From Octopus sinensis (lineage: Eukaryota), in contig NC_043026.1 of assembly GCF_006345805.1 (NCBI RefSeq), forward strand, positions 8,804,001 through 8,868,000: a stretch of 64,000 nt of DNA, in the 5' to 3' direction. The stretch's first letter is position 1, and every line of letters begins with the position of its first letter. Under the pieces are notes generated by a model, which was not told where the DNA came from, did no database searches, and was given only the letters and a program-made list of their open reading frames with translations. The position numbers were made by a program, and so were the translations under genes. This document shows positions 29,518 through 64,000 of the stretch, in pieces.

Positions 29518-31160
29518 ACATCTCCCTCAACCTATGTCTTCCACCCACATGTAACAAGAAAACTTTTTACACACCCTACCCCCAACAAACCAATCTACAT
29601 CTCTTCTTCACATTCCTTCCATACACTATGCCTACCTCTCACTCCCCCAATCCTGTCCTCATGGTGCTGTTCCTCTTTATCATTGCTATCCGGTAGCCCC
29701 CTGACCCTATATAATACCCAGCTTGTCATCACTCAACGCCCCCTACACTCTAATCATGCTTCCTTTGCAGTATCCTATTCCTTTATTACCCACAAGGGGC
29801 TAAACACAGAGGGGAGACAAACAAGGACAGACAAAGGGATTAAGTCAATTACATCGACCCCAGTGCATAACTGGTACTTATTTAATCGACCCCGAAAGGA
29901 TGAAAAGCAAAGTCGACCTCAGCGGAATTTGAACTCAGAGCCTAACGTTTCTGCCAGCTCACCACCTTTGCAGTATCCTGTCCCTTATATTATGACGTTT
30001 AAACCTCAAGGGTATGCCCTGGCCCTTGCCACCATCTATATCTCTTTCTTCCCTTACTCAACCATCCTCATCTATGCTCTAATCCCCTCCCTAGTGAATA
30101 CGCCCATCATTTTGCCACTATCTCCATCGTGTTGTCTCCCACCCTCTATCTCCTTCTCCTGCATTTCCCTCAGGCTGGGTAACCATGTATCTCCTTTGTG
30201 GCAGCACACCCGTTTCTGTCTTCATTCCACATCTCTCTCTCTCTCTCTCTCTCTCTCTGGCCTGGTAAACTTGTACTTCCTCTACAGCAACGGACAGATC
30301 ACAACAACAGATGCTGCCCAACACACAGAACCAAACCATGAAGATGCTACAGAATTTCAACTATGATACAACTCCCACTGTTCCAGATAGAGTTCGTTAA
30401 AACTTGCCAAACCTGTTACTTCACAATATGTAAGACATTTGCCATGTATTTTTATAAGGGGTTGTAATAAATAATAGTTGCATTGAATTTACCTGGTTCT
30501 TCTTGTCATTCTTTTATATAAAGGTAACTCCAGGCACACAAACTAGACCAGCCACAGTTAACTCGCCAGCAAAACTCATAACCAATGCTACAGAATTTCA
30601 ACTGTGATACAACTTCCACTGTTCCAGATAGAGTTCGTTAAAATTTCTGATGGTTCAACTGGGGTCTGGGAAGCCAGAAGGCTGCACTAGGCCCAGTCTG
30701 ATCTGACAAAGTTTCTATGGCTGGATGCCCTTCCTAATGCCAACCACTCCGTGAGTGTCATGGGTTGCTTTTTATGTGCCACCGCATGGGGGCCAGGCGA
30801 GGCTGGCAACAGCCATGATCGGATGGTGCTTTTTACGTGCAACCTGCACGGAGGACAGACGGGCTGCGCTGGCAGCGGCCACATTCGGATGGTTCCTTTG
30901 TCTGTGTATATGTCTATAAACTACTCGTAGTAATACCTGTCATTAATTGGGTAATTGCTTTTATTCTTTCTTGAGAGCCCCATTCAGAGTATTATTATAT
31001 GTATAGTTTACCCCTCCTGTATGTGTGTATTTTATAAGAGAAAAATGAAATAACTGAAGTAGGAAAAAGACCAGTTTCATACACAGGCTTCTGTTTTATT
31101 TATCAAAACACTAATGGCAATTATATACTCTTTACTCTTTTACTTGTTTCAGTCATTGAC

Positions 31161-32116
31161 TTTGAGTAAGTCCTCAACACCACCGTCTTCCTTTCAAGCT
31201 CTTTTAACCATTTTTTGGGAGCTGTCAAGTCCCACACAAGAAATTCCTTTGCCATTTCAACACAAAGTTCAATTACAGTTCAAAATGTAAGAAAATAAAA
31301 CAAGACACAAAAAAAGAAGGGAAGAAATAAAATAAAAAATAACAGTTCAAAAAAGAGTTCTTTTATTTTTTTAAATAAACGAAAGCTTTGAAGAAGAGAG
31401 TTCAAATCCAGGCGAAGAAATAAATTAATTTTCGGCTGAAAAGGTTCTCCTGGCCAAATGTACATAGGTTCCTTGGTATGAATCGTCTTTACCCGTAATT
31501 GGTAAAAGAAATCCAAACACAATACTGGCTACAGCCAACGGTAACTGTACCAGGTTCTAATCATTCGGGCGAGGATACGTCCCTCCACTGCTTTTTTTTT
31601 TTTTAATGAATCCAAAATATTCACACTAAATTCACAAAACAGCAGCCACCGAGAGCAGGCGAAATTTGTTAACAAAAAAGAACAATATAACAAATTACAC
31701 CCAGCTCAGATAAAACAAAATCACTGGCCTCGACAACCTTCTCTGTTTTTGTCCTTTTTTCTTGTAATTGGCCAGAGCCAAAACACTCACGTCCACCTTG
31801 CAAAAACAGTCCTTCCTGCCTTGTACTCCTTGGTAATCCACAGACACTAAGATAATTTTCGCAAAGAAATTAATCTTTGCAGAGGGGCTACGCCTCCTCG
31901 AAAACACAATTCTCACTGCAAAGTGAGTCTTTATAGGCGGCCACAGGCAGGCAAATGTCTGGAGCAGACTGGAGTCTATTACTCACCAAAAAATATTAAA
32001 TACAGGGCAACAAACTCCACTAAGCCCTCAAAAAATACGACAAACGCCTACCTGTAGTCAAGCCTCAAAGTTCAATATTTCACGACGAAAGACGTGACAT
32101 CAAGCAGCAAGAACTC
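31161..32116 (-). mobile_element. Truncated ORF1-element copy (5' region plus ~32 codons)
   Basis: ATG at 31255: MAKEFLVWDLTAPKKWLKELERKTVVLRTYSK, homologous to the ORF starting at 33480; joined to a SINE tail. Confidence 0.8.
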
Positions 32117-34084
32117 GCGGGCTGGACATAGACATTAATTAATGATGGTGATGGAACGAAGATGGTGATGGGAGAAGACGAAAGCGCCCGCCGACCCCTG
32201 CTTCTCTAAGACAATGTCCTTTTTTCAATAAGTTCAAAAATGTTCAAAATTTTACAAATGTCACAAGAGGCAACGAACCTCTTTTTCAATATGATGCACA
32301 GCATCCACAGGTTTCAGTTACCCGGCCGACCAGCGCTCTTGCTTCCTTGAAACACTCACCCGCTTCCAACCAGGCCGCACAAGTAGAAATGTAAAGGTAT
32401 TCGCGATCCTGCACAGATCATTTTCCAATAGGAGCTCCGCAGCTACCTGCGAAGGCCACTTAGGGTCCTCTGTGCAGGACCGGAGACCCTTCCATTGGCC
32501 TCTCCATTTCATTTTCCTTATCTTGTTCTCCATGGTCCCTCCTTTGTGGAAGAGGACCACATAATTGACCTCCGACGGTTCATCCACCTGAGGAGGCTCG
32601 GGAGAGGCCGTCTGTGTGTCAAAATCTGCACGGCGGCGTCCCGTTTCTTTTCTTTTTTCCTTGGGCCGCGGGAGGTTTAGGTTCTGGTGTTGCACACAAC
32701 GGATCCTCTTTTTCTCTCACAGCTTCCGGGTCTTTTGGTGGGTCACCATTGTTTCCCACTTTTCTTTTTCTCGTTGAGGAAGTTATTGCTTCCTCGTTCT
32801 GTTTCTCTCCCTCCTTTGAGGAGACAGGAAGAGGCTCCAACATCAACTGCTCTAGCATCCTACTTTGGTCCTTGGGGCAGTTCTTCTTAATGTGGCCGGT
32901 CTCCAGGCACAGGTGACACCTGGGGGGGGGGGGGGCGTCCCTCAAGCATCACCGGATACCTGGACACGGCCATCCTCAAGAAATCTGGGAAAACCAGACT
33001 TTTGGCTGATTGGGTCCACAGGGTCAACACAGCTTTTGCCCCTTCCCAATCAGCCGCAGGCAACACTTTTACATTCAGCAGCTTGGAACTGCTACCATCC
33101 AGACCCCAGCGGATAGAATCCTCTATCCACTCGGGTTCAACGCCGGGTGGTAAGCCGCAGATCCAGGCTCTCAATAATTTTTCTCCCTTGTAATTTGGGA
33201 GAAACAACACTTCTTTGCCCTCAAGGGGCTGGCTTGCAAAATCGCAAGCTTCTTTTGGGGAGTCAAACAGCAACCAGACCGTTGCGTATTTCACTCCCCG
33301 TGCGATAAATTTAAGGGCTGGCATGTAATCCGCCAGCTCGTTCAGTATGGTGGCCTTCGGGAAGACGGCTGTGGTGTGGAGCGACTTCGAGTAAGTCCTC
33401 AACACCACAGCCTCCTCCTCCAGCTCTTTTAAGTACTTTTTGGGAGGTGTCAATTCCCACACCGTAAATTCCTTTGCCATGGTAACACAAAGTTCAATAA
33501 CAGTTCGAAGTATAAAGATATAAAAATAGACACAAAAAGGAGAATGAAAAATACAACAGAAGGGAAGAAACAAAATTAGAAATAGCAGGTCAAAAAAGTT
33601 CTTTTTCAAAAAATAAATGAGAGCTCGAAGAAGAGAGTTCAAATCCAGACAAAGGAATTAAATTTTTTCTTTTTTCTCTTTTCTCTTTTTTAGGCCAAAA
33701 AAGGTACTCCAGGCCAAATGTCCAGCTGGTAAAACACCTTGCAAAAAGAATCCATGGTACTCCGTGGTAAATCCGGTGGAAAACACAAAGACAATTTCAA
33801 AACACATTAATTTTTGCGGAGGGGCTACGCCTCCTCGCAAACACAATTCTCACTGCAAAGTGAGTCTGTAAAGGCGGCCACAGGCAGGAAAATGTCTGGA
33901 GCAGACTGGAGTCTATTACTCACCAAAATATATTAAATACAGGGCAACAAACTTCACTAAGCCCTCAAAAAATACGACAAACGCCTACCTGTAGTCGAGC
34001 CTCAAAGTTCAATATTTCACAACGAAAGATGTGACATCAAGCACCAAGAACTCTCCGCCAAAAACAAACACGTCCGTCTCCGAC
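32117..34084 (-). mobile_element. Tx1/L1-like element carrying ORF1 only
   Basis: GC-richer 1.9-kb block present only in unit 1; its 5' ~230 bp matches 31891-32116; no endonuclease or RT motifs. Confidence 0.7.
32318..33480 (-). pseudogene. gag-like ORF1 (RRM-like segment plus CCHC zinc knuckle), frameshifted
   Basis: MAKEFTVWELT...RAWICGLPPGVEPEWI...EGRPP / RCHLCLETGHIKKNC (C-x2-C-x4-H-x4-C). Frame breaks in a 14-nt C run (32922-32935); a 13-nt run would restore it. A possible second shift lies near 32650. Confidence 0.75.
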
Positions 34085-34401
34085 AAAGATAACCAAGCTA
34101 CTTACCACACAACTACTCCTGTTTACTCAATTTGAAAACTCTTTGTATTGTCTTTTGTCTCTTGTGTCTGTGTGTGTGCGCCTAAGTTCATATATGAGTA
34201 GTGTCCATTTAATATCACGCAAAAATTGATAAAAATTTGAGAATTAAAATTAAATATCTTTTTTCTAATTGATAGAATTTTACTAAACCTTTGGATGGCA
34301 AATTGAAAATAATGTGAATAAATAAACATCACATTCGACAGAATAACCTGCATGGTAAAGAGTTTCAGTAACCCCTTAGAGATTATGATTTAGTTTAAAT
34401 A

Positions 34402-35406
34402 TCAGTGGGATTGCTTCTTCCCCTTATGAACACATTTGTGAGAAGTTAAGCTGCTATGTTGAGTGAATGACCTACCACAGATATCACAAGGAAATAGCTT
34501 CTCTCCTGTATGGATACGTTTATGGGTCATTAGGTTACTACTGGTAGAGAAAGATTTATTACAGACATCACAAGAATATGGTGTCTCTCCTGTATGAATA
34601 CGTTTATGAGTAGTTAGGTGGCCACTTTGAGAGAATGATTTACCACAGATTTCACAGTGAAATGGTGTCTCTCCTGTATGAATACGTTTGTGTAAAGTCA
34701 AATAAATTTCTTCAGTGAATAATTTACCACAGATATCACAAGAATATGGTGTTTCTCCTGTATGAATACGTCTGTGTCCAGTTAAGTTAGAACTCACGGT
34801 GAATGATTTACCACAGATATCACAATGATAGTGTGACTCTCCTGTATGAATACGTTTATGATAAGTTAGAGCACTTTTACCAGGAAATAATTTACCACAG
34901 ATATTACAGGAATATGGCTTCTTTCCTGTATGAATAGGTTTGTGATTAGTTAAAGCACTTCTTTGAGAGAATGATTTACCACAAATATCACACTGAAATG
35001 ACTTCTCTCCTATATGAAGACGTTTATGATAAGTTAGAGCACTTTTACCAGGAAATAATTTACCACAGATATTACAGGAATATGGCTTCTTTCCTGTATG
35101 AATAGGTTTGTGTTTAGTTAAAGCACTTCTTTGAGAGAATGATTTACCACAGGTTTCACAGTGAAATGGCTTCTCTCCAGTATGAACACGTATGTGAGAA
35201 TTTAAATGATTTCGGTCAGAGAATGATTTACCACAGATTTCACAGTGAAATAGCTTCTCTCCTGTATGAATACGTTTGTGCTTATTTAAGTTACCTTTAC
35301 TTGAGAAAGACTTTTTACACACATCACAGTCATGTGACAATTTTTGTCTCTCTTTTTTGCTATCTTCTGGTAAAATCTGTTCCTTCACTTTCTCACTCTT
35401 TTCCAT
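34402..35406 (-). CDS. C2H2 zinc-finger protein A1 (11 fingers)
   Basis: 334-aa intact ORF, TGE(K/T)P linkers, C-terminus HKGKKQSH. Confidence 0.93.
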   Translation of the reverse strand: MEKSEKVKEQILPEDSKKERQKLSHDCDVCKKSFSSKGNLNKHKRIHTGEKLFHCEICGKSFSDRNHLNSHIRVHTGEKPFHCETCGKSFSQRSALTKHKPIHTGKKPYSCNICGKLFPGKSALTYHKRLHIGEKSFQCDICGKSFSQRSALTNHKPIHTGKKPYSCNICGKLFPGKSALTYHKRIHTGESHYHCDICGKSFTVSSNLTGHRRIHTGETPYSCDICGKLFTEEIYLTLHKRIHTGETPFHCEICGKSFSQSGHLTTHKRIHTGETPYSCDVCNKSFSTSSNLMTHKRIHTGEKLFPCDICGRSFTQHSSLTSHKCVHKGKKQSH

Positions 35407-35761
35407 TATTTTTCCTTCAACTTCACCATATACCTTCTTTTTTTATTCTTTTTGCTTCTGTAGTCTTTTGTTTACAAATATTTCAACTGTTGTATTTCTG
35501 GCCACTGTTACCTTTGTCACAAAACAACTAAATTTATCCACATTCAATCTGCAAACAGGCTCATCTTGTAGACACTCCAGCCAGTGATGTCCAGAAGGTT
35601 TGCTAATAACACAATTCAGAGTAAATATATCAGAGGAATTCCACCAAAGATTTATAGAAACAATCTTATATATATGTTCTGTACAATATTTTCATTTTGG
35701 TCTTTAAAAGATGATAAATAATGAGAATGTATCTTCAGTTATGCCAATGTCATCTGATATT

Positions 35762-38060
35762 CTGAAACAATAAAGAAACAACAATGTAAGATATAGAGGC
35801 TACTTAAAAAAATACAGATTCAACATTTCCATAAAGATAAACTCTAGAAACAAACATTTAACTGAACAACAGAACTTTCTAATTTATTAATATTGACATC
35901 ACAAAATCCTGTTTGAAGCTAACATATTTCTAAACTCCCGCTCCACATTCATAAATACACACACACACTTTTTTACTGGTTTCAGTTGTTTTCACTGTGG
36001 TCATGCTGGAGCACCAACTTTAAAGGCTTCAGTCAATAGAATCAATGCTAGGACTTATTTTTTGAGCTTAGCACTTATTCTATCAGCCACTTTTGCCAAA
36101 CCACAGGTTTATGGGGACATAAACACACCAACACTGTTTGTCAAGTGTTGAATAGGTGGGAGGACAACACACCCACCCACACACAAATATATTGGGCTTC
36201 CTTCAGCTTCCATCTCCCAAATCCATTCACAAGGCCAGAGGATATTGTAGAAAATGTATGTCTGTGACTAGTTACCTAACAGCTCACAATTTCTTCTCTT
36301 TAACTCCATAAAGGGAAAAAATTACTGGAAATAGTCATTACTCATTTTGCCCCATGAGGAGATTTCACGAATGATTACAAAATGTTTATCAGCTAAGCAA
36401 ATGGCCTTCCCTGAATGCATTGAAATCATTATAACAGAATCACTATTTCAGGAAATTATCATTGTTCTCTTTGAGTGTGTAGAAAGAGAAATTTGGCAGA
36501 GGCAAGAAAAGGTGAAATTGTCTCTTCAAATTATCCAGAATTACATTTGAAAACAAAGACTCAAACATCAATATCTATCCTTCGACATCTTAAAGATCAG
36601 AAATGCAAAAAGCTATTTAAGTATCGAATTCAAATGAAAGAGAATCAGAGAAAAATTGCAAATGATGTGAAATTAATGAATATCGAATAAATGGGGGGAA
36701 AAAAATCAACATAAAATATCATCAACAGTTTCTTCAAGATCTCTTCGTGGTTAGGGCAGCAGACTCGCGGTCGTAGGATTGCGGTTTCGATTCCCAGACC
36801 GGGCGTTGTGAGTGTTTATTGAGCGAAAACACCAAAAAGCTCCACGAGGCCCCGGCAGGGGATGGTGGTGATCCCTGCTGTACTCTTTCACCACAACTTT
36901 CTCTCACTCTTACTTCCTGTTCTGTTGTACCTGTATTTCAAAGGGCCGGCCTTGTCACTCTGTGTCACGCTGAATGTCCCCGAGAACTACGTTAAGGGTA
37001 CACGTGTTTGTGGAGTGCTCATCGTCGTAACCGACGGAGTGCTTCCATCCACTAACAAGAGATTATTGAAAGTAGTCATTACTCATTTTGCCCCATCTTA
37101 GTCATGATTTTGATAATTGAAAATTACCAAATTAGACACTAAACGGGGGGTAAAAATTGATCTGGAATCTAAGAGAGAGAAGAATATTGATGGTTAAACA
37201 CCGAACATCATCCAGATAATTTATTAGTAACCTCGATTATTATCGGATTGAGAGTTGAGGGAAAATTTCTTGATAATAAAAAGGACCTGCAACTCCAACA
37301 ACTATAAGGACAAATTCCCAGTCCTAAATATATATTTCTTTACTCACCACAAGGGGCTACACACTGAGGGGACAAACAAGGCCAGAAAAACGGATTAAGT
37401 CGATTATATCGACTCCGAAAGGATGAAAGGCAAAGTCGGCCTCGGCGGAATCTGAACTCAGAACGTAACGGCAGACGAAATATCTATTTTTTTACTGCCC
37501 ACAAGGGGCTAAACACAGAGGGGAGAAACAAGGACAGACATAGGTATTAAGTCGATTACATCGACCCCAGTGCGTAACTGGTACTTTATTTATCGACCCC
37601 GAAAGGATGAGAGGCAAAGTCGACCCCGGCGGAATTTGAACTCAGAACGTAACGGCAGACGAAATATGTCCACGCATTTCTGCCAGCTCGCCGCCATCCC
37701 CAGTCCTAAAATATAATGTAGCAATACTCACAAAAATCATAAATCCAAACAAATTAGGAGAAACGGGAAAATACTCATTTTGCCCCGCTTACTAATTATG
37801 TCCCTTACCTTATATCAAGAAACAAGGGTTCGATAAATTATAATAAAGCATTGGATTCTCAGCATTTCTGTGGTTGGAGTTTATTTTAAGAACATTTCTC
37901 CACCTAAAACACACAACAAACAAACTTAAAGAAGAAACGATGGAGCGTGTAGGAGGTTGCCGCCATAGCTAGAAATAGCAGCCAAATGTGGAACAGATCA
38001 AAGGACATCTGAGACACCAAAGTATTAAAAGATTAAATGTTTTCGTTGTTTAATACTTAC
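35762..38060 (-). other. Predicted 5'-UTR intron of A1 (also 47068-49354 for A2, 59436-61566 for A3)
   Basis: GTAAGT donor and polypyrimidine-TTTCAG acceptor at homologous positions. Confidence 0.55.
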
Positions 38061-38217
38061 GAAAATGTCTTTATAAAGGATGGTGTTGTTGTTAGATGTG
38101 CGTCAGGTGGTTGAGAAATCTATTACAAATGTGTTTCGGAGTTAATTGAGAGAAATTCTGGCACCAGACATCAAATGTTTGTCGTAACGTAATGAATGGG
38201 GGCGTACGTACGTTTCG

Positions 38218-39452
38218 TGCGCATGCGTATGAAATATTGGTTTCAAATTTTGGCACAACGCCAGCAATATCGGCGGAGGTGTTGGGGGGGGGCCTAAGTC
38301 GCTTACCTTGACCTCAGTAGACAACTAGTATTTATTTTATTGTGTCCCGCCCCAGCAAAGATATTAAAGGCAAAGTCGACCTCGTCGTAATTTACGCATA
38401 TATACATAAATATCGATGTAGGCACAACACGTGCACCCCACCGATGTCTGGGTGTTTTTTTTTTAGGGGGGGGGGGTCCCAAAAATGTTTTCGGATTCTG
38501 ATATCATCGATATAGAATACGATTTTGGCAAACTATCGCGTTTTCGTAGAACACCTATTTACTGTATCTGTAGAAAAAACGGCCGTTGAAGAAAATATCT
38601 TACAAATATCTTACAAATATCTTACAAACTACAGAATTTTCTCAATAAAGCCAAAAGGAAAAGGTGTTTTATGTAACACATTCTACCAGTATACGAAGTT
38701 TAAAATTTTTTAGTTACCTAGAAATTATGTTAAAAACTGCCGTTCAAACAGAAAAGATCCCCAATCTTTTTCTTAAACGAGGGACATATTCATACGGCAC
38801 AGAATGTTTTTTTTACCTCAATAGACGTGAGTGATTGGTTGAAATTGCCGAAATGCTTGAAATTAAAGACGAAATATCTTACAAACTACAGAATTTTCTC
38901 AATAAAGCCAAGAGGAAAAGATGTTTTATGTAACACATTCTACCAGTATACGAAGTTTAAAACTTTTTAGTTACCTAGAAATTATGTTAAAAACTGCCGT
39001 TCAAACAGAAAAGATCCCCAATCTGTTTCTTAAACAAGGGACATATTCATACGGCACAGAATGTTTTTTTACCTCAATAGACGTGAGTGATTGGTTGAAA
39101 TTGCCGAAATGCTTGAAATTAAAGACGAAATATCTTACAAACTACAGAATTTTCTCAATAAAGCCAACAGGAAAAGATGTTTTATGTAACACATTCTACC
39201 AGTATACGAAGTTTAAAACTTTTTAGTTACCTAGAAATTATGTTAAAAACTGCCGTTCAAACAGAAAAGATCCATTAAACTTTGCCTTTCACCTTTTTCT
39301 GCTAGGGTTCAATAAAATAAATACCAGTTGACTACTCGGGTCCATGAAATCGACTGACACTTGACCCTCCCCGAAATTTCTGGTTTTCTACCAAAATCTT
39401 TAAAAAACAAAAGAAAAAAAGAAGAAAAACCAGTATTTCATACGCATGCGCA
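38218..39452. promoter_or_regulatory. Putative bidirectional promoter core of A1/B1
   Basis: Mirror NRF1-like motifs at 38218-38227 and 39443-39452 end inverted arms (~37940-38235 vs ~39430-39715). Repeated at 49515/50737 and 61724. Confidence 0.55.
38617..39273. repeat. 256-bp satellite, ~2.6 copies
   Basis: Same monomer as 62110-64000; preceded by (atatcttacaa)x3. Confidence 0.9.
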
Positions 39453-39603
39453 CTAAGCGTATTTCCGCCTAAATTCCTTCATTTTAACAAACTTGATTTC
39501 AGTCGGAATTTCTCTCAATTCACTCCCAAACACATTTATAATACATTTCTCAACCACCTGACGCACTTCTAACAACAACACCATCCTTTTTAAAACCATT
39601 TCC

Positions 39604-40308: not shown

Positions 40309-40596
40309 AATATCAGATGACATTGGCATAACTGAAGATACATTCTCATTATTTATCATCTTTTAAAGACCAAAATGAAAATATTGTACAGAACAGATAT
40401 ATAAGATTGTTTCTACAAATCTGTGGTGGAATTCCTCTGATATATTTACTCTGAAATGTGTTATTAGCAAATCTTCTGGACATCACTGGCTGGAGTGTCT
40501 ACAAGATGTGTCTCTTTGCAAATTAAACTTGGGTAAATTTACTAACGAGTTTTGGGACAAAGGTAACAGTGGACAGAAATACAGCAGTCGAAATAC

Positions 40597-40631
40597 TTGC
40601 AAACAAAAGACTATAGAAGTACAAAGAAGAA

Positions 40632-40683
<52 letters not shown>

Positions 40684-49700: not shown

Positions 49701-49914
49701 ATACATAAATATCGATGTAGGCACAACACGTGCACCCCACCGATGTCTGGGGTTTTTTTTTTGGGGGGGGGGTCCAAAAAATGTTTTCGGATTCTGATAT
49801 CATCGATATAGAATACGATTTTGCCAAAATATCGCGTTTTCGTAGAACACCTATTTACTGTATCTGTAGAAAAAACGGCCGTTGAAGAAAATATCTTACA
49901 AATATCTTACAAAC

Positions 49915-51892: not shown

Positions 51893-51946
<54 letters not shown>

Positions 51947-54021: not shown

Positions 54022-54430
54022 TATTTGTGCTAAATCATAATCTGTAAGGGGTGACTGAACCCTTTACCATGCAGATTATTCTGTCGAATGTGAGGGTTAT
54101 TTATTCCCATTATTTTCAATTTGTCCTGCATTAACCCACAGCTTTCAAATTTTGATGATATGATTGTGTATTTTCACAATGACATTGTAGGGTAGGTGTT
54201 AGAAGCCGACTCTGACTAGTTTGATCATAAAATAGGTAGAATATTTGGGCCAGATATGGCTGGTTTAAATTCTAAAGAGTGGACACTAGATGTACCAACA
54301 CTTCTTACTTCTCACAAGGACCATAAGGGGCCATTATTGACTGCCATTGAAAATATTTCATCATCATCATTTAACGTCCGTTTTCCATGCTAGCATGGGT
54401 TGGACGGTTCAACTGGGGTCTGGGAAGCCA

Positions 54431-54882
54431 GTCATTATCATCATTGTTCGACCGTGGTCGAGACAATGGAATTTACCATGCTACGCCAGACTTCACGGTC
54501 CATCATGGCATTACGGAGGTCCTGTTGCTGGATGCCTGTATCCCTGGAGATTACATCAGGGTAGGAGAGTGTGCGCCCTCTGGTATCGCGAGCAGATGGC
54601 TTCCAGAGGAGAAGAGCAGAAATTGCCTTATTTTCAGCTCTACAACAATATCCAGCCAACTGGACTCTCCTACCTTTCACAAGAGATGACACAGGTAGTA
54701 GTTTCCCATTTATTTGTACTTTGGTTGGATGACGCTTCCACGAGAGATTTTGAGTTCTCATAAGGAGGCGAGTGTAGGTTCCATCCAACCGCCTCTCAAG
54801 CTTCTTTGATAACGTCCAGGTTTCTGAGCCATAGAGTAGAATTGGTTAGTCTCTGCTTAGATTTGATGACCAGATGCCAGGC
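54431..54882 (-). mobile_element. 5'-truncated RTE-clade LINE inserted in an RTE-tailed SINE
   Basis: DGTYTRLLMRTQNLSWKRHPT...RRVQLAGYCCRA...RGRTLSYPDVISRDTG...DREVWR* with an atgatgataatgac tail; absent at the homologous site ~42580. Confidence 0.8.
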
Positions 54883-57800
54883 CGTCTGATCTGGCAGTGT
54901 TTCTACAGCTGGATGCCCTTCCTAATGCCAACCACTCTGTGAGTGTAGTGGGTGCTTTTTATGTGCCACCTGCACAGGTGCCAGACGAGGCTGGCAAACG
55001 GCCACGATCGGATATTTTAAATACAGTCCTGCCCTGTCTCACTGTAGCATTGCGCTTTGCTATTCCTGACCTGTATGTTCCACCCCCATTCCCTGTCTTA
55101 CTATATTATTGCTATTGGCTTGCCCTCAACTTATGTCTTCCACCCACATGTAACAAGAAAACTTTTTACACACCCTACCCCCAACAAACCAATCTACATC
55201 TCTTCTTCACATTCCTTCCATACACTATGCCTACCTCTCACTCCCCCAATCCTGTCCTCATGGTGCTGTTCATCTGTATCATTGCTATCCGGTAGCCCCC
55301 TGACCCTATATAATACCCAGGTTGTCATCACTCAACACACCCTACACTCTAATCATGCTTCCTTTGCAGTATCCTATTCCTTTACTACCCACAAGGGGCT
55401 ACACACAGAGAGGAGACAAACAAGGACAGATAAAGGGATTAAGTTGATTACATCGACACCAGTGCGTAACTGGTACTTATTTAATCGACCCCGAAAGGAT
55501 GAAAAGCAAAGTCGACCTCGGCGGAATTTGAACACAGAGCCTAACTTTTCTGCCAGCTCGCCGCCTATGCAGTATCCTGTCCCTTATATTATGACGTTTG
55601 AACATCAAGGGTATGCCCTGGCACTTGCCACCATCTATATCTCCCTCTTCCTTTACTCAACCATCCTCATCTATGCTCTAATCCCCTCCCTAGTGAATAC
55701 GCCCATCATTTTGCCACAATGTCCATCGTGTTGTCTCCCACCCTTATCTCCTCCTGCATTTCCCTCAGGCTGGGTAACCATGTATCTCCTTTGTGGCGGC
55801 ACACCCTTTCCTGATCTCTCTCTCTCTCTGGCCTGGTATACTTGTACTTCCTCTACAGCAACAGACAGATCACAACAAAAGATGCTGCCCAACACACAGA
55901 ACCAAGCCATGAACATGCTACAGAATTTCAACTGTGATACAACTTCCACTGTTCCAGATAGAGTTACTTAAAACTTGCCAAACCTGTTACTTCACCATTT
56001 GTAAGACATTTGCCATGTATTTTTATAAGGGGTTGTAATAAATAACAGTTGCTTTGAATTTACCTGGTTCTTCTTGTCATTCTTTTGTATTCGGTAACTC
56101 CAGGCAGACAGAATAGACCAGTGAATGCATAACCAACACACAGCTACATCAAGATGAACCAGCCACAGTTAACTCGCAAGCAAAACTCATAACCAATGCT
56201 ACGGAATTTCAACTGTGATACAACTTCCACTGTTCCAGATAGAGTTCATTAAAATTTGTGATGGTTCAACTGGGGTCTGGGAAACCAGAAGGCTGCACCA
56301 GGCCCAGTCTGATCTGACAAAGTTTCTACGGCTGGATGCCCTTCCTAATGCCAACCACTCCGTTAGTGTAGTGGTTGCTTTCACGTGCCACTGGCACGGA
56401 GGCCAAAGGATGCTGGAAACAGCTACGATCGGATGGTGCTTTTTACGTGCAACCTGCATGGAGGACAGTCGGGCTGCGCTGGCAGCGGCCACATTCGGAT
56501 GGTTCCTTTGTGTGTGTATATGTATATATACTACTCGTAGTAATACCTGTCATTAATTGGGTAATTGCTTTTATTCTTTCTTGAGAGCCCCATTCAGAGT
56601 ATTATTATATGTATAGTTTACCCCTCCTGTATGTGTGTATTTTATAAGAGAAAAATGAAATAACTGAAGTAGGAAAAAGACCAGTTTCATACACAGGCTT
56701 CTGTTTTATTTATCAGAACACTAATGGCAATTATATACTCTTTACTCTTTTACTTGTTTCAGTCAGTGACTTTGAGTAAGTCCTCAACACCACCGTCTTC
56801 CTTTCAAGCTCTTTTAACCATTTTTTGGGAGCTGTCAAGTCCCACACAAGAAATTCCTTTGCCATTTCAACACAAAGTTCAATTACAGTTCAAAATGTAA
56901 GAAAATAAAACAAGACACAAAAAAAGAAGGGAAGAAATAAAATAAAAAATAACAGTTCAAAAAAGAGTTCTTTTATTTTTTTAAATAAACGAAAGCTTTG
57001 AAGAAGAGAGTTCAAATCCAGGCAAAGAAATAAATTAATTTTCGGCCGAAAAGGTACTCCTGGCCAAATGTACATAGGTTCCTTGGTATGAATCGTCTTT
57101 ACCCGTAATTGGTAAAAGAAATCCAAACGCAATACTGGCTACAGCCAACGGTAACTGTAACAGGTTCTAATCATTCGGGTGAGGATACGTCCCTCCACTG
57201 TTTTTGTTTTTTTTATGAATCCAAAATATTCCCACTAAATTCACAAAACAGCAGCCACCGAGAGCAGGCGAAATTTGTTAACAAAGAATAACAATATAAC
57301 AAATTACACCCAGCTCAGATAAAACAAAATCACTGGCCTCGACAACCTTCTCTGTTTTTGTTCTTTTTTCTTGTAATTGGCCAGAGCCAAAACACTCACG
57401 TCCACCTTGCAAAAACAGTCCTTCCTGCCTCGGTACTCCTTGGTAATCCACAGACACGAAGATAATTTTCGCAAAGAAATTAATTTTTGCGGAGGGGCTA
57501 TGCCTCCTCGAAAACACAATTCTCACTGCAAAGTGAGTCTTTATAGGCGGCCACAGGCAGGCAAATGTCTGGAGCAGATTGGAGTCTATTACTCACCAAA
57601 AAATATTAAATACAGGGCAACAAACTCCACTAAAGCCTCAAAATATACGACAAACGCCTACCTGTAGTCGAGCCTCAAAGTTCAATATTTCACGACGAAA
57701 GACGTGACATCAAGCAGCAAGAACTCTCTGCCAAAAACAAACACGTCCGTCTCCGACAAAGGTAAGCAAGCTACTTACCACACAACTACTCCTGTTTACT

Positions 57801-58074
57801 CAATTTGAAAACTCTTTGTATTGTCTTTTGTCTCCTGTGTCTGTGTGTGTGCGCCTAAGTTCATATATGAGTAGTGTCCCTTTAATATCACGCAAAAATT
57901 GATAAAAATTTGAGAATTAAAATTAAATATCTTTTTTCTAATTGATAGAATTTTACTAAACCTTTGGATGGCAAATTGAAAATAATGTGAATATATAAAC
58001 ATCGCATTCGACAGAATAACGTACATGGTAAAGGGTTTCAGTAACCCCTTAGAGATTATGATTTAGTTTAAATA

Positions 58075-59079
58075 TTAGTGGGATTGCTTCTTCCCCTTAT
58101 GAACACATTTGTGAGAAGTTAAGCTGCTATGTTGAGTAAATGACCTTCCACAGATATCACAAGAATATGGTGTCTCTCCTGTATGAATACGTTTATGGGT
58201 CATTAGGTTACTACTGGTAGAGAAAGATTTATTACAGACATCACAAGAATATGGTGTCTCTCCTGTATGAATACGTTTATGTTTAGCTAAGTTGCCACTT
58301 TGAGAGAATGATTTACCACAGATTTCACAGTGAAATAGTGTCTCTCCTGTATGAATACGTTTGTGTAAAGTCAAATAAATATTTTGAGAGAATAATTTAC
58401 CACAGATATCACAAGAATATGGTGTTTCTCCTGTATGAATACGTCTGTGTCCAGTTAAGTTAGAACTCATGGTGAATGATTTACCACAGATATCACAAGG
58501 ATATGGTGACTCTCCTGTATGAATACGTTTATGATAAGTTAGAGCACTTTTACCAGGAAATAATTTACCACAGATATTACAGGAATATGGCTTCTTTCCT
58601 GTATGAATACGCTTGTGATTAGTTAAAGCACTTCTATGAGAGAATGATTTACCACAGATGTCACATTGAAATGGCTTCTCTCCTGTATGACAATGCTGGT
58701 GATTATTTAAAACACTTTGGTCAGAGAATCTTGTACCACAGACACTACAATGATATGGTGACTCTCCTGTATGAATACGTTTATGTTGAGTTAGAGCACT
58801 GTTATCAGAAAATAATTTGCCACAGATATTACAGGAATATGGCTTCTCTCCTGTATGAATACGTTTATGTTTAGCTAAGCTGCCACTTTGAGAGAATGAT
58901 TTACCACAGATTTCACAGTGAAATGGCTTCTCTCCTGTATGAATACGTTTGTGACTATTTAAGTTACATTTACTTGAGAAAGACTTTTTACACACATCAC
59001 AGTCATGTGACAATTTTTGTCTCTCTTTTTTGCTAACTTCTGGTAAAATCTGTTCCTTCACTTTCTCACTCTTTTCCAT
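58075..59079 (-). CDS. C2H2 zinc-finger protein A3 (11 fingers; translation identical to A2)
   Basis: 334-aa intact ORF. Confidence 0.93.
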   Translation of the reverse strand: MEKSEKVKEQILPEVSKKERQKLSHDCDVCKKSFSSKCNLNSHKRIHTGEKPFHCEICGKSFSQSGSLAKHKRIHTGEKPYSCNICGKLFSDNSALTQHKRIHTGESPYHCSVCGTRFSDQSVLNNHQHCHTGEKPFQCDICGKSFSHRSALTNHKRIHTGKKPYSCNICGKLFPGKSALTYHKRIHTGESPYPCDICGKSFTMSSNLTGHRRIHTGETPYSCDICGKLFSQNIYLTLHKRIHTGETLFHCEICGKSFSQSGNLAKHKRIHTGETPYSCDVCNKSFSTSSNLMTHKRIHTGETPYSCDICGRSFTQHSSLTSHKCVHKGKKQSH

Positions 59080-62000
59080 TATTTTTCCTTCAACTTCACA
59101 ATATACCTTCTTTTTTTATTCTTTTTGCTTCTATAGTCTTTTGTTTACAAATATTTCAACTGTTGTATTTCTGGCCACTGTTACCTTTGTCACAAAACAA
59201 CTAAATTTATCCACATTCAATCTGCAAACAGGCTCATCTTGTAGACACTCCAGCCAGTGATGTCCAGAAGGTTTGCTAATAACACATTTCAGAGTAAATA
59301 TATCAGAGGAATTCCACCACAGATTTATAGAAACAATCTTATATATCTGTTCTGTACAATATTTCCAATTTGGTCTTTGAAAAGCTGATAAATAATGAGA
59401 ATGTATCTTCAGTTATGCCAATGTCATCTGATATTCTGAAATAATAAAGAAACAACAGTGTAAGATATAGAGGCTACTTAAAAAAATACAGATTCAACAT
59501 TTCCATAAAGATAAACTCTAGAAATAAACATTTAACTGAACAACAGAACTTTCTAATTTATTAATATTTACATCACAAAATCCTGTTTGAAGCTAAAATA
59601 TTTCTAAACTCCAGCTCCACATTCATAAAAACACACACATACACTTTTTTACTGGTTTCAGTTGTTTTGACTGTGGTCATGCTGGAGCACCAACTTTAAA
59701 GGCTTCAGTCAATAGAATCAATGCTAGGACTTATTTTTGAGCTTAGCACTTATTCTATCAGCCACTTTTGCCAAACCACAGGTTTATGGGGACATAAACA
59801 CACCAACACTGTTTGTCAAGTGTTGAAGGGGTGGGAGGACGACACACCCACATATATATTGGGCTTCCTTCAGTTTCCATCTCCCAAATCCATTCACAAG
59901 GCCAGAGGATATTGTAGAAAATGTATGTCTGTGACTAGTTACCTAACAGCTCACAATTTCTTCTCTTTAATTCCATAAAGGGAAAAAATTACTGGAAATA
60001 GTCATTACTCATTTTGCCCCATGAGGAGATTCCACGAATGATTACAAAAAGTCTATCAGCCAAGCAAATGGCCTTCCCTGAATGCATTGAAAACATTATA
60101 ACAGAATCACTATTTCAGGAAATTATCATTGTTCTCTTTGAGTGTGTAGAAAGAGAAATTTGGCAGAGGCAAGAAAAGGTGAAATTGTCTCTTCAAATTA
60201 TCCAGAATTACATTTGAAAACAAAGACTCAAACACATCAATATCTATCCTTCGACATCTTAAAGATCAGAAATGCAAAAAGCTATTTAAGTATCGAATTC
60301 AAATGAAAGAGAATCAGAGAAAAATTGCAAATGATGTGAAATTAATGAATATCGAATAAATGGGGGGAAAAAATCAACATAAAATATCATCAACAGTTTC
60401 TTCAAGATCTCTTCGTGGTTAGGGCAGCGGACTCGCGGTCGTAGGATTGCGGTTTCGATTCCCAGACCGGGCGTTGTGAGTGTTTATTGAGCGAAAACAC
60501 CAAAAAGCTCCACGAGGCCCCGGCAGGGGATGGTGGTGATCCCTGCTGTACTCTTTCACCACAACTTTCTCTCACTCTTACTTCCTGTTTCTGTTGTACC
60601 TGCATTTCAAAGGGCCGGCCTTGTCACTCTGTGTCACGCTGAATGTCCCCGAGAACTACGTTAAGGGTACACGTGTTTGTGGAGTGCTCATCGTCGTAAC
60701 CGACGGAGTGCTTCCATCCACTAACAAGAGATTATTGAAAGTAGTCATTACTCATTTTGCCCCATCTTAGTCATGATTTTTGATAATTGAAAATTACCAA
60801 ATTAGACACTAAACGGGGGTTAAAAATTGATCTGGAATCTAAGAGAGAGAAGAATATTGATGGTTAAACACCGAACATTATCCAGATAATTTATTAGTAA
60901 CCTCGATTATTATCGGATTGAGAGTTGAGGGAAAATTTCTTGATATTAAAAAGGACCTGCAACTCCAACAACTATAAGGACAAATTCCCAGTCCTAAATA
61001 TATATTTCTTTACTCACCACAAGGGGCTAGACACTGAGGGGACAAACAAGGCCAGAAAAACGGATTAAGTCGATTATATCGACCCCAAAAGGATGAAAGG
61101 CAAAGTCGACCCCGGCGGAATTTGAACTCAGAACGTAACGGCAGACGAAATATGTCCACGCATTTCGCCCGGGGTGTTAACCCTTCTGCCAGCTCGCCGC
61201 CATCCCCAGTCCTAAAATATAATGTAGCAATACTCACAAAAATCATAAATCCAAACAAATTAGGAGAAACGGGAAAATACTCATTTTGCCCCGCTTACTA
61301 ATTATGTCCCTTACCTTATATCAAGAAACAAGGGTTCGATAAATTATAATAAAGCATTGGATTCTCAGCATTTCTGTGGTTGGAGTTTATTTTAAGAACA
61401 TTTCTCCACCTAAAACACACAACAAACAAACTTAAAGAAGAAACGATGGAGCGTGTAGGAGGTTGCCGCCATAGCTAGAAATAGCAGCCAAATGTGGAAC
61501 AGATCAAAGGACATCTGAGACACCAAAGTATTAAAAGATTAAATGCTTTCGTTGTTTAATACTTACGGAAATGTCTTTATAAAGGATGGTGTTGTTGTTG
61601 GAAGTGCGTCAGGTGGTTGAGAAATCTATTACAAATGTGTTTAGGAGTGAATTGAGAGAAATTCAGGCACCAGACATCAAATGTTTGTCGTAACGTAATG
61701 AATGGGGGCGTACGTACGTTTAGTGCGCATGCGTATGAAATATTGGTTTCAAATTTTGGCACAACGCCAGCAATATCGGCGGAGGTGTTGGGGGGGGGGG
61801 CTAAGTCGCTTACCTTGACCTCAGTAGACAACTAGTATTTATTTTATTGTGTCCCGCCCCAGCAAAGATATTAAAGGCAAAGTCGACCTCGTCGTAATTT
61901 ACGCATATATACATAAATATCGATGTAGGCACAACACGTGCACCCCACCGATGTCTGGGTGTTTTTTTTTGGGGGGGGGGGTCCCAAAAATGTTTTCGGA

Positions 62001-62109
62001 TTCTGATATCATCGATATAGAATACGATTTTGCCAAAATATCGCGTTTTCGTAGAACACCTATTTACTGTATCTGTAGAAAAAACGGCCGTTGAAGAAAA
62101 TATCTTACA

Positions 62110-64000
62110 AACATGTTACAAACTACAGAATTTTCTCAATAAAGCCAAGAGGAAAAGATGTTTTATGTAACACATTCTACCAGTATACGAAGTTTAAAAC
62201 TTTTTAGTTACCTAGAAATTATGTTAAAAACTGCCGTTCAAACAGAAAAGATCCCCAATCTTTTTCTTAAACGAGGGACATATTCATACGGCACAGAATG
62301 TTTTTTTACCTCAATAGACGTGAGTGATTGGTTGAAATTGCCGAAATGCTTGAAATTAAAGACGAAATATCTTACAAACTACAGAATTTTCTCAATAAAG
62401 CCAAGAGGAAAAGATGTTTTATGTAACACATTCTACCAGTATACGAAGTTTAAAACTTTTTAGTTACCTAGAAATTATGTTAAAAACTGCCGTTCAAACA
62501 GAAAAGATCCCCAATCTGTTTCTTAAACAAGGGACATATTCATACGGCACAGAATGTTTTTTTACCTCAATAGACGTGAGTGATTGGTTGAAATTGCCGA
62601 AATGCTTGAAATTAAAGACGAAATATCTTACAAACTACAGAATTTTCTCAATAAAGCCAAAAGGAAAAGGTGTTTTATGTAACACATTCTACCAGTATAC
62701 GAAGTTTAAAATTTTTTAGTTACCTAGAAATTATGTTAAAAACTGCCGTTCAAACAGAAAAGATCCCCAATCTTTTTCTTAAACGAGGGACATATTCATA
62801 CGGCACAGAATGTTTTTTTACCTCAATAGACGTGAGTGATTGGTTGAAATTGCCGAAATGCTTGAAATTAAAGACGAAATATCTTACAAACTACAGAATT
62901 TTCTCAATAAAGCCAAGAGGAAAAGATGTTTTATGTAACACATTCTACCAGTATACGAAGTTTAAAACTTTTTAGTTACCTAGAAATTATGTTAAAAACT
63001 GCCGTTCAAACAGAAAAGATCCCCAATCTGTTTCTTAAACAAGGGACATATTCATACGGCACAGAATGTTTTTTTACCTCAATAGACGTGAGTGATTGGT
63101 TGAAATTGCCGAAATGCTTGAAATTAAAGACGAAATATCTTACAAACTACAGAATTTTCTCAATAAAGCCAAAAGGAAAAGGTGTTTTATGTAACACATT
63201 CTACCAGTATACGAAGTTTAAAATTTTTTAGTTACCTAGAAATTATGTTAAAAACTGCCGTTCAAACAGAAAAGATCCCCAATCTTTTTCTTAAACGAGG
63301 GACATATTCATACGGCACAGAATGTTTTTTTACCTCAATAGACGTGAGTGATTGGTTGAAATTGCCGAAATGCTTGAAATTAAAGACGAAATATCTTACA
63401 AACTACAGAATTTTCTCAATAAAGCCAAGAGGAAAAGATGTTTTATGTAACACATTCTACCAGTATACGAAGTTTAAAACTTTTTAGTTACCTAGAAATT
63501 ATGTTAAAAACTGCCGTTCAAACAGAAAAGATCCCCAATCTGTTTCTTAAACAAGGGACATATTCATACGGCACAGAATGTTTTTTTACCTCAATAGACG
63601 TGAGTGATTGGTTGAAATTGCCGAAATGCTTGAAATTAAAGACGAAATATCTTACAAACTACAGAATTTTCTCAATAAAGCCAAAAGGAAAAGGTGTTTT
63701 ATGTAACACATTCTACCAGTATACGAAGTTTAAAATTTTTAGTTACCTAGAAATTATGTTAAAAACTGCCGTTCAAACAGAAAAGATCCCCAATCTTTTT
63801 CTTAAACGAGGGACATATTCATACGGCACAGAATGTTTTTTTACCTCAATAGACGTGAGTGATTGGTTGAAATTGCCGAAATGCTTGAAATTAAAGACGA
63901 AATATCTTACAAACTACAGAATTTTCTCAATAAAGCCAAGAGGAAAAGATGTTTTATGTAACACATTCTACCAGTATACGAAGTTTAAAACTTTTTAGTT
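62110..64000. repeat. Expanded 256-bp satellite (>=7 copies) with 512-bp dimer structure
   Basis: ORF starts at 62158, 62414, 62670, 62926, 63182 and 63438; alternating caagaggaaaagatg/caaaaggaaaaggtg and cgagggac/caagggac variants. Confidence 0.95.

What the first reader, a model, noticed from the sequence alone, without database searches (positions are those of the whole stretch)
29524..64000. Tandemly amplified head-to-head zinc-finger gene-pair cassette built from an inverted duplication
Seen: a 12-13 kb unit repeats about three times, each with a minus-strand 11-finger gene and (units 1-2) a plus-strand 17-finger gene. A and B mirror each other in promoter arm, predicted exon 1, splice sites, ~550-bp upstream leader region, ~110-bp 3' UTR and KKQSH C-terminus. 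Known: octopus genomes have large clustered C2H2 expansions. Inference: one gene was duplicated as an inverted pair sharing a promoter, and the pair then amplified by unequal crossover as a co-regulated two-protein module. This is a concrete mechanism for cluster growth and the best candidate for a novel system here.
Basis: partly seen in the sequence, partly recalled or inferred. Interest (0 to 1): 0.8.

Follow-up and report, generated by a model that had tools for sequence, protein, structure and literature searches.

The report
Tandem array of divergent octopus zinc-finger pairs
This is a real, recently amplified block of two back-to-back zinc-finger genes in an octopus (Octopus sinensis) gene cluster, but it is an ordinary way for such clusters to grow and one partner of each pair looks damaged, so it is not a new kind of system.

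Summary
A 12.3-13.3 kb unit starts at 29524, 42840 and 55123. Each unit carries a minus-strand 11-finger gene (A1-A3, intact 334-aa ORFs). Units 1 and 2 also carry a plus-strand 17-finger gene (B1, B2). A and B mirror each other in a ~0.5 kb promoter arm, a 547-bp leader, the first and last fingers, the KKQSH end and ~105 nt after the stop. A 256-bp satellite lies between the two promoter arms.

Within-type divergence (2-3%) is far below A-versus-B divergence (14-22%), so the pair existed before it was amplified. However, each gene has its own promoter copy, 1.23 kb apart and more than 2.3 kb apart in unit 3. B1 has lost its ATG to a (TA)22 tract, B2 has a 1-nt frameshift, and B1/B2 pN/pS is about 1.3. 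A fourth, decayed gene (A0, 21808-25260) has no partner.

The array's left edge is the 5' end of a SINE-like repeat that recurs at each unit junction. Identity between units is mosaic. A public O. sinensis record holds a recombinant unit.

Verdict: birth-and-death growth of a known expanded family by block duplication. It is a new member of a known kind, of low to moderate interest.

The parts
21808..24046 (-). A0: decayed family member outside the stated range. It has about 17 finger remnants, an ORF at 22563-23477 that stops after finger 10, a conserved leader, and a 3' flank like that of B.
24650..25260 (-). A0 promoter arm (CGCATGCGCA at 25155). No satellite and no B partner follow it.
26172..27814 (+). 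SINE-like repeat marking the left edge of array homology. Its 63-bp tail is expanded to 22 copies (26334-27814). 27815-29523 is filled with other interspersed repeats.
29524..42839 (.). Unit 1 (13,316 bp): spacer, A1, satellite, B1, junction SINE.
32117..33799 (.). Unit-1-specific insert flanked by 254-bp direct repeats (31863-32116 and 33800-34053, 94%). It carries a 251-aa ORF (32887-33642, minus strand).
34299..35953 (-). A1 last-exon arm: about 105-nt 3' tail, ORF 34402-35406 (334 aa, 11 fingers, intact) and 547-bp leader with a TTTCAG acceptor-like site.
37700..38400 (-). A1 promoter and putative exon-1 arm (CGCATGCGCA at 38218, donor-like CCG|GTAAGT, CpG o/e 1.04).
38615..39273 (.). 256-bp satellite, 2.6 copies, at the centre of the unit-1 inverted pair.
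39285..39800 (+). B1 promoter and putative exon-1 arm (CGCATGCGCA at 39443).
40116..42276 (+). B1 last-exon arm: leader, a (TA)22 tract at 40636-40679 in place of the ATG, 17 intact fingers from 40738, stop codon ending at 42174, 3' tail.
42505..42730 (+). Junction copy of the SINE-like repeat between unit 1's B1 and the unit-2 spacer.
42840..55122 (.). Unit 2 (12,283 bp).
45604..47257 (-). A2 last-exon arm. The ORF 45707-46711 (334 aa, 11 fingers) has an exact product match in O. sinensis CM016888.1.
48995..49700 (-). A2 promoter arm (CGCATGCGCA at 49515).
49911..50568 (.). 256-bp satellite, 2.6 copies (unit 2).
50580..51100 (+). B2 promoter arm (CGCATGCGCA at 50737).
51338..51918 (.). Unit-2-specific insertion in the B2 intron. 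It includes a copy of the SINE-like repeat at 51669-51897.
51970..54123 (+). B2 last-exon arm. ATG at 52520, then a 1-nt deletion in an A-run inside finger 4 (about 52874) gives a stop at 52883. Thirteen further fingers follow in the +2 frame, to 54021.
54352..54965 (+). Junction copy of the SINE-like repeat, split by a private 447-bp insertion (54430-54876).
55123..64000 (.). Unit 3, cut off by the end of the window.
57972..59625 (-). A3 last-exon arm. The ORF 58075-59079 encodes a protein identical to A2.
61205..61900 (-). A3 promoter arm (CGCATGCGCA at 61724).
62109..64000 (.). 256-bp satellite, at least 7.4 copies, organised as 512-bp dimers. It runs off the end of the window.

Best explanation
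The region is part of a lineage-specific C2H2 poly-zinc-finger gene cluster of Octopus sinensis, growing and decaying by the usual birth-and-death route.

An old paralogue pair sits head to head. A has 11 fingers and B has 17, and they are about 15-20% diverged outside a homogenised leader block. Each gene has its own copy of a CpG-rich promoter arm, and a 256-bp satellite lies between the arms. The whole block (spacer, A, satellite, B) was later copied head to tail at least three times. This was most likely by unequal homologous exchange between copies of a SINE-like repeat that bounds the unit (inferred).

Since then the units have exchanged sequence, giving mosaic identity and a recombinant unit in another record. 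The finger arrays have been remodelled by exchange between fingers. Units have also gained private repeat insertions and changed satellite copy number.

The A copies are intact and moderately constrained. They probably encode sequence-specific DNA-binding proteins with no recognisable effector domain. B1, B2 and A0 each carry a different lesion and look like genes on the way out.

Shown here: the architecture, the divergence pattern and the lesions. Inferred: the exchange mechanism, promoter function and loss of B function.
For: - Collinear unit homology and its identities.
- Six and only six finger arrays in the window.
- Pfam finds only C2H2 families in A2 (zf-H2C2_2 E=3.8e-91, zf-C2H2 E=1.8e-64).
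- Within-type versus between-type distances.
- Mosaic identity between units 1 and 2: 93.6-94.5% in the left spacer, 95-97% around A, 98-99.8% in the A intron and promoter, 80-85% in finger arrays.
- Finger matrices: A1 fingers 3-4 are copies of fingers 5-6 (90-94%). B1 and B2 share only terminal and a few internal fingers. B2 has 94-98% identical internal finger repeats.
- Lesions: A0 has a stop after finger 10, B1 has lost its ATG in the window and in both L001 copies, and B2 is frameshifted.
- pN/pS is 0.56 for A1/A2 and 1.26 for B1/B2.
- The SINE-like repeat sits at the array edge and at both junctions, with no homology to its left.
- Private insertions show the units are separate loci.
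- L001, from O. sinensis GCA_006345805.1, repeats the same block with a 12,651-bp period. One of its units shows 256 consecutive unit-2-type sites followed by about 250 unit-1-type sites.
- Promoter arms have CpG o/e 0.92-1.04 against 0.27-0.41 in gene bodies.
- Literature: octopus C2H2 expansions are clustered and tandem (PMC12513265, PMC9068888). Multigene mixed-orientation tandem blocks and the birth-and-death model are described in mammalian ZNF clusters (PMC2443715). Intragenic finger duplication and deletion are described in mouse (PMC5363842).
Against: - No transcript, read-depth or spanning-read data could be consulted, so copy number, transcription starts and splice sites are unverified.
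- The B2 frameshift lies in a homopolymer and could be a long-read consensus error.
- All B1-type copies keep 17 open fingers, so they might still be translated from a non-AUG or internal start.
- pN/pS rests on 3.5 synonymous and 17.5 non-synonymous changes.
- The relation between L001 and the window is unresolved. L001 could be further units of the same array, another haplotype, or another assembly of the same locus.
- With three lineages (A0, A, B) and no outgroup, the deep branching order cannot be rooted.
Confidence: 0.75

Rival explanations
1. First reader's model. An inverted duplication made a two-gene module driven by one shared bidirectional promoter, and selection amplified the module because the two proteins act together.
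For: - The genes are divergent, with mirrored and conserved promoter arms.
- The central 3 kb is uniformly rich in CpG, flanked by CpG-poor gene bodies on both sides.
- The pair was copied as a block.
- B arrays remain open reading frames of 17 fingers.
Against: - There are two promoter copies, not one. They are 1.23 kb apart in units 1 and 2 and more than 2.3 kb apart in unit 3, with a variable satellite between them.
- B1 lacks an ATG in three copies, and B2 is frameshifted.
- B1/B2 pN/pS is about 1.26.
- A0 exists without a partner.
- Published octopus data report that C2H2 duplicates within one expansion clade often fall in different co-expression modules (PMC12513265).
Confidence: 0.1
2. 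The copy number or unit order is partly an assembly artefact, for example haplotypes or mis-joined long reads laid out in tandem. The true locus would then have fewer units or a different arrangement.
For: - Units 2 and 3 differ by only about 1.2%.
- The public O. sinensis record L001 shares a 6.4-kb stretch at 99.8-100% identity and 256 of 256 informative sites with the window, yet has different neighbours.
- That assembly has 5.2% duplicated BUSCOs (PMC10700109).
- The B2 frameshift lies in an A-run.
Against: - The window has no N gaps.
- Units carry private insertions of 1.68 kb, 580 bp and 447 bp and have different satellite lengths.
- B1 and B2 finger arrays are structurally different.
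- L001's own two units differ from each other by 1.1-2.5%.
- At least two A/B units must therefore be real.
Confidence: 0.1
3. The head-to-head arrangement arose by inversion of one member of an older head-to-tail tandem array (A0, A, B ancestor), not by an inverted duplication. Only the later block amplification is.
For: - A0 lies 10 kb away in the A orientation.
- A0 shares with B a 17-finger array length, the N-terminal variant (EEKGKQK, without the 6-bp insert) and at least 175 bp of 3' flank (42255-42429 vs 21978-21808, 81%) that A1-A3 lack.
- Inversions within tandemly arrayed gene clusters are a recognised process (PMC3283317, abstract).
Against: No inversion breakpoints can be recognised at this level of divergence. 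The three-lineage comparison is unrooted. The two routes leave the same present-day structure.
Confidence: 0.4

Closest known systems
Tandem and block (multigene) duplication in mammalian C2H2/KRAB-ZNF clusters under birth-and-death evolution (PMC2443715; mouse clusters PMC5363842)
   Same: Local clusters grow by head-to-tail copying of blocks that can hold several genes in mixed orientation. One described example is a (-,+,+) triplet repeated in tandem. Some copies become pseudogenes. Finger arrays are remodelled by internal duplication and deletion.
   Different: The octopus genes have no KRAB, SCAN or other effector domain; only 24 non-finger residues precede the first finger. The unit is small (12-13 kb). 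It consists of a mirrored pair with a satellite exactly between two promoter copies.
Octopus and coleoid lineage-specific C2H2 expansions (Albertin et al. 2015, cited from memory; PMC9068888; PMC12513265)
   Same: Same organism group and gene class. The genes are clustered on a few chromosomes and duplicates occur in tandem.
   Different: In the passages I read, those papers describe the expansions at the phylogenetic and expression level. I found no description of this unit architecture, but I did not read the supplements.
Human 19p12 ZNF91-family cluster with interspersed beta-satellite blocks (Eichler et al. 1998; I saw only its reference-list entry in PMC2443715, and the content is from memory)
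   Same: A zinc-finger gene cluster associated with satellite repeats (the paper's title). From memory, the duplicated ZNF units alternate with the satellite blocks.
   Different: The satellites are unrelated and the scale is very different (the human units are far larger, as I recall). Here the satellite sits between two divergent promoters. No sequence comparison was made.
Bidirectional promoter gene pairs
   Same: The genes are divergent, and the region between them is CpG-rich and carries a CGCATGCGCA palindrome. That palindrome resembles the NRF1 site common in such promoters; the motif identity is from memory.
   Different: There are two separate, duplicated promoter cores at least 1.23 kb apart with a variable satellite between them. 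The transcription starts are unknown.

Membership tests
Krueppel-type C2H2 poly-zinc-finger genes | Tandem CX2CX12HX3H fingers joined by TGEKP-like linkers, encoded as an 84-bp periodic array | tested here: met
   There are 11 (A1-A3), 17 (B1), 16 plus 1 broken (B2) and 12 or more (A0) fingers. TRF finds period-84 arrays. Pfam gives zf-H2C2_2 E=3.8e-91 and zf-C2H2 E=1.8e-64.
KRAB-, SCAN-, BTB- or ZAD-type ZNF subfamilies | An N-terminal effector domain upstream of the fingers | tested here: not met
   Only 24 residues precede finger 1. Pfam finds only zinc-finger-type families in A2. The leader has stops in all three frames. An effector exon further upstream cannot be excluded without transcripts.
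Tandem block duplication (tandemly arrayed genes, birth-and-death) | Head-to-tail units that are collinear through genes and intergenic DNA | tested here: met
   The periods are 13,316 and 12,283 bp, and 12,651 bp in L001.
Tandem block duplication (tandemly arrayed genes, birth-and-death) | Same-position paralogues in different units are closer to each other than to the other gene in their own unit | tested here: met
   A-A 2.2-2.6%, B-B 3.3% and A-B 14-16% in the promoter arm; 1.1%, 9.8% and 18-22% in the 3' leader.
Tandem block duplication (tandemly arrayed genes, birth-and-death) | Some copies are inactivated | tested here: met
   A0 has a premature stop and a degenerate tail. B1 has lost its ATG. 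B2 has a frameshift, which could be a sequencing error.
Tandem block duplication by non-allelic homologous recombination | A repeat at the array edge and at the unit junctions, and recombinant units | tested here: inconclusive
   The SINE-like repeat is present at 26172, 42505 and 54352, and homology begins exactly at its 5' end. L001 holds a recombinant unit. The right edge of the array lies outside the window, and the mechanism itself cannot be observed.
Tandem block duplication | Copy number confirmed by reads or by an independent assembly | not testable with these tools
   Only L001 (O. sinensis CM016888.1) was available. It shows the same block repeated but in a different arrangement.
Bidirectional-promoter gene pair | One shared promoter, with divergent transcription starts within about 1 kb | tested here: not met
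   Each gene has its own conserved core. The A and B cores are 1.23 kb apart in units 1 and 2 and more than 2.3 kb apart in unit 3. The transcription starts themselves are unknown.
Bidirectional-promoter gene pair | Co-expression of the two genes | not testable with these tools
   No expression data were available.
Gene-conversion-maintained palindrome (ampliconic type) | Arms kept nearly identical (over 99%) along their length | tested here: not met
   The arms are 80-82% identical. Only a 310-bp leader core is near-identical, with 2 fixed differences in 309 sites.

The most novel reading that the evidence does not exclude
The mirrored CpG-rich promoter arms and the 310-bp near-identical leader core could form a subfamily-specific regulatory cassette. 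The core has 2 fixed A/B differences in 309 sites, against 17-18% in the sequence on either side. It would be kept uniform in both orientations by selection rather than by chance conversion, so that A-type and B-type transcripts are produced together, as coding or non-coding RNA. The variable central satellite would set the spacing between the two promoters. In that reading the block is amplified as a regulatory unit even though B no longer needs to encode a full protein.
Probability: 0.1. Interest if true: 0.5.

Novelty: new member of a known kind. Interest (0 to 1): 0.25.

Why it matters
This is a clean, base-level example of how an octopus C2H2 cluster grows. A two-gene block bounded by a SINE-like repeat is copied in tandem. 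The units then exchange sequence, the finger arrays are reshuffled by exchange between fingers, and some copies decay.

Its value is as a worked example for people studying cephalopod gene-family expansion. It is also a warning for annotation and assembly: near-identical units, homopolymer frameshifts and start codons lost in microsatellites all occur here. It does not reveal a new mechanism or system.

The one feature that might repay further work is the sharply bounded, near-identical 310-bp leader block shared by all six genes.

Tried and rejected
- Whole-protein homology search with A2 and the exhaustive representative-library search. Both were swamped by generic poly-zinc-finger proteins, with best identities of 60% or less. 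They said nothing about species or subfamily.
- A search with the 47-aa non-finger N-terminus found no protein sharing three 5-residue words. No annotated protein with this N-terminus is therefore in that database.
- Exact-sequence look-ups of A1, A0 and B1 found nothing. Only the A2 product is on record.
- Rfam and tRNA scans of the window gave no hits.
- The conserved leader core does not fold better than shuffled controls (z=+1.3), so a structured RNA was rejected.
- A coding reading of the leader was rejected because there are stops in all three frames.
- Pfam found nothing in the spacer ORFs.
- I tried to place A0 as sister to A or to B. With three lineages and no outgroup the site counts only measure branch lengths, so the attempt was dropped.
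- The Albertin et al. 2015 paper is not held in the library.
Full report
**1. What is in the sequence**

A self-comparison of the window and unit-against-unit BLAST show a head-to-tail repeat whose units start at 29524, 42840 and 55123. The periods are 13,316 and 12,283 bp. The third unit is cut off by the end of the window.

Homology between units runs through everything:
- the spacer (29915-32116 vs 43188-45358, 94.7%);
- the minus-strand gene and its intron (33783-37601 vs 45086-48902, 95.4%);
- the promoter region and a 256-bp satellite (37678-40043 vs 48972-51337, 98.1%);
- the plus-strand gene (40070-42582 vs 51919-54429, 86.0%);
- units 2 and 3, which are 98.8% identical over 5 kb (43801-48784 vs 56158-61153).

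A six-frame scan finds exactly six zinc-finger arrays in the 64 kb.
- A1, A2 and A3 (34402-35406, 45707-46711, 58075-59079, minus strand) are intact 334-aa ORFs with 11 fingers. A2 and A3 encode the same protein.
- B1 and B2 (plus strand) have 17 finger units.

Pfam sees only C2H2 families in A2. Only 24 residues precede the first finger.

**2. The mirror symmetry is real**

A and B are head to head. Their inverted homology covers the following:
- The last-exon arm (34299-35953 vs 42276-40116, about 80-82%). It consists of about 105 nt after the stop codon, the first and last fingers (85% and 92-95%), the KKQSH C-terminus and a 547-bp leader.
- A separate upstream arm (37935-38243 vs 39720-39427, 81.9%, E=4e-82, and 38297-38342 vs 39355-39310).

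Aligning the six upstream arms shows conserved blocks present once per gene and nowhere else in the window. One is CGCATGCGCA (6 matches, 0.01 expected). Another is CTAGCTATGGMGGCWACCT (6 matches, 0 expected). There is also a donor-like CCG|GTAAGT.

These arms and the sequence between them have CpG observed/expected of 0.92-1.09. The gene bodies have 0.27-0.41 and the spacer 0.53. This is what unmethylated promoters next to methylated gene bodies would look like, but that is an inference.

The leader contains a TTTCAG acceptor-like site about 390 nt upstream of the ATG and several short upstream ORFs. Without transcripts, the exon-1 and splice assignments remain plausible but unverified.

**3.

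(a) The promoter is not shared. Each gene has its own copy. The A and B cores are 1.23 kb apart in units 1 and 2. In unit 3 they are more than 2.3 kb apart, because the central 256-bp satellite has 2.6, 2.6 and at least 7.4 copies. In unit 3 the satellite is organised as 512-bp dimers.

(b) The B genes are damaged.
- In B1 a (TA)22 tract (40636-40679) replaces the ATG that A0, A1-A3 and B2 have at the homologous position. Upstream there are in-frame stops, and the first in-frame ATG is inside finger 2, at 40873.
- B2 keeps its ATG (52520), but a 1-nt deletion in an A-run inside finger 4 gives a stop at 52883. The remaining 13 fingers continue in another frame. Because the deletion is in a homopolymer, it could be a consensus error.
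- For orthologous fingers, pN/pS is 0.56 for A1/A2 and 1.26 for B1/B2. The counts are small.

(c) A0 has about 17 finger remnants, a stop after finger 10 and a degenerate tail. It has its own promoter arm (24650-25260) but no satellite and no B partner.

**4. History**

In the promoter arm, A1-A3 differ by 2.2-2.6%, B1-B2 by 3.3%, A versus B by 14-16%, and A0 by 10-12% from A and 15% from B. In the 3' leader, A versus B is 18-22%. The A/B pair is therefore much older than its amplification and was copied as a block.

The first step is less clear. A0 shares three features with B that A1-A3 lack: the 17-finger array length, the N-terminal variant, and at least 175 bp of 3' flank. With three lineages and no outgroup the tree cannot be rooted. 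An older head-to-tail array followed by inversion of one gene fits as well as an inverted duplication.

**5. Mechanism of amplification and later change**

Array homology begins exactly at the 5' end of a SINE-like repeat at 26172. Copies of that repeat sit at both unit junctions (42505 and 54352). To the left of the repeat the sequences are unrelated. Its 63-bp tail is expanded to 22 copies at 26334-27814. This is the layout expected if unequal exchange between flanking repeat copies made the first duplicate. That remains an inference.

Identity between units is mosaic. For units 1 and 2 it is:
- 93.6-94.5% in the left spacer;
- 95-97% around A;
- 98-99.8% in the A intron and promoter;
- 80-85% in the finger arrays.

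The low values in the arrays are structural. A1 fingers 3-4 are copies of its fingers 5-6. B1 and B2 share only their terminal fingers and a few internal ones. B2 contains 94-98% identical internal repeats of one or two fingers.

Units also carry private insertions:
- 1.68 kb flanked by 254-bp direct repeats in unit 1;
- 580 bp, including a SINE-like copy, in the B2 intron;
- 447 bp inside the unit-2/3 junction repeat.

These differences show that the units are separate loci and not a trivial assembly duplication.

**6. Independent record**

The exact A2 product is encoded in CM016888.1 of GCA_006345805.1, the Octopus sinensis assembly (PMC10700109). That 21-kb locus (L001) shows the same block with a 12,651-bp period: A upstream region, satellite, B1-like gene, spacer, A2, satellite (about 4.6 copies), B1-like gene. 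Both B1-like copies also lack the ATG.

One L001 unit matches window unit 2 at 256 consecutive informative sites (42840-49388). It is then mosaic through the promoter and satellite. After that it matches window unit 1 at about 250 consecutive sites (40120-42353). L001's own two units differ from each other by 1.1-2.5%.

The species is therefore O. sinensis or something indistinguishable from it. The block recurs beyond the window, and units have recombined. I could not determine whether L001 represents further units of the same array, another haplotype, or another assembly of this locus. By analogy a B gene probably follows the unit-3 satellite, but this is not shown.

**7. An unexplained detail**

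A sharply bounded block of about 310 bp covers the putative acceptor and the first 200 nt of the leader. It has only 2 fixed A/B differences in 309 sites. The flanking sequence has 17 in 93 on one side and 24 in 138 on the other. Recent copy-specific changes inside the block are not depleted.

The block has stops in all frames, no unusual RNA fold (z=+1.3) and no Rfam match. The pattern fits gene conversion among all six genes before the amplification better than ongoing strong constraint. Selection on a regulatory element is not excluded.

**8. Comparison with what is known**

Coleoid C2H2 genes are known to be massively expanded, clustered on a few chromosomes and duplicated in tandem. Paralogues often fall in different expression modules (PMC9068888, PMC12513265).

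In mammalian ZNF clusters, tandem duplication of multigene blocks with mixed orientation has been described, along with birth-and-death turnover (PMC2443715). So has internal finger duplication and deletion (PMC5363842).

The present locus is an octopus instance of that kind. Its particular features are the small mirrored two-gene unit, the satellite between two promoter copies, the SINE-like boundary and the homogenised leader block. It fails the tests for a single bidirectional promoter and for a conversion-maintained palindrome.

**9. Verdict**

The best explanation is birth-and-death block duplication with decay of the B partners (confidence 0.75). The co-regulated two-protein module is unlikely (about 0.1). 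This is a new member of a known kind, with interest 0.25.

Noticed in passing
window 46868-47179 (A2), and the homologous positions in A0, A1, A3, B1 and B2: A sharply bounded block of about 310 bp in the leader is almost identical in all six genes. It has 2 fixed A/B differences in 309 sites, against 17-18% in the sequence on either side. It is non-coding, has no unusual RNA fold and has no Rfam match.
   Followed up: partly
window 21808-25260: A0 is a fourth, decayed member of the family just outside the stated range. It has about 17 finger remnants and a stop after finger 10. It has its own promoter arm but no satellite and no partner. Its 3' flank matches that of B, not that of A1-A3.
   Followed up: yes
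window 26172-27814; other copies near 13753-14181, 18751-18928, 20022-20510, 30649-30893, 42505-42730, 43903-44030, 51669-51897, 54352-54965 and 56256-56387: An abundant SINE-like repeat (CATCATCATC...TTCCATGCTAGCATGGGTTGGACGGTT...) has a 63-bp unit in its 3' tail. At 26334-27814 that unit is expanded to a 22-copy satellite with 54% G+C. The repeat was not classified.
   Followed up: partly
window 32117-33799: A unit-1-specific 1.68-kb insert is flanked by 254-bp direct repeats (94% identical). Its 251-aa ORF (32887-33642, minus strand) has no Pfam match. Its single database homologue is the uncharacterized protein LOC115225585 of Octopus sinensis (68% identity). It is probably a mobile-element remnant.
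   Followed up: partly
window 62109-64000: The unit-3 satellite is organised as 512-bp dimers. Copies at a 512-bp offset are 99.6% identical, against 98.0% at a 256-bp offset. In units 1 and 2 the satellite ends at monomer position 146, next to the B arm.
   Followed up: yes
window 45786-46786 vs 58154-59154: A2 and A3 are 100% identical over at least 1 kb of coding sequence, while their flanks differ by 0.4-0.8%. This suggests very recent conversion or constraint.
   Followed up: no
window 17985-18765, 16104-16654 and 25594-25968: A long, imperfect CAT microsatellite (260 units) creates spurious His-rich ORFs. There are also two short tandem arrays, 184 bp x3 and 185 bp x2, made of interspersed-repeat sequence.
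   Followed up: no
L001 (O. sinensis CM016888.1:8,887,673-8,908,677), reverse-complement coordinates 3420-4383 and 16162-17018: Insertions of about 0.9 kb lie between the B promoter arm and the B leader. Over about 450 aligned bases, the one in L001's complete unit is 98% identical to the unit-2 insertion of the window. They are combined there with a B1-type gene, so L001 holds recombinant units.
   Followed up: partly
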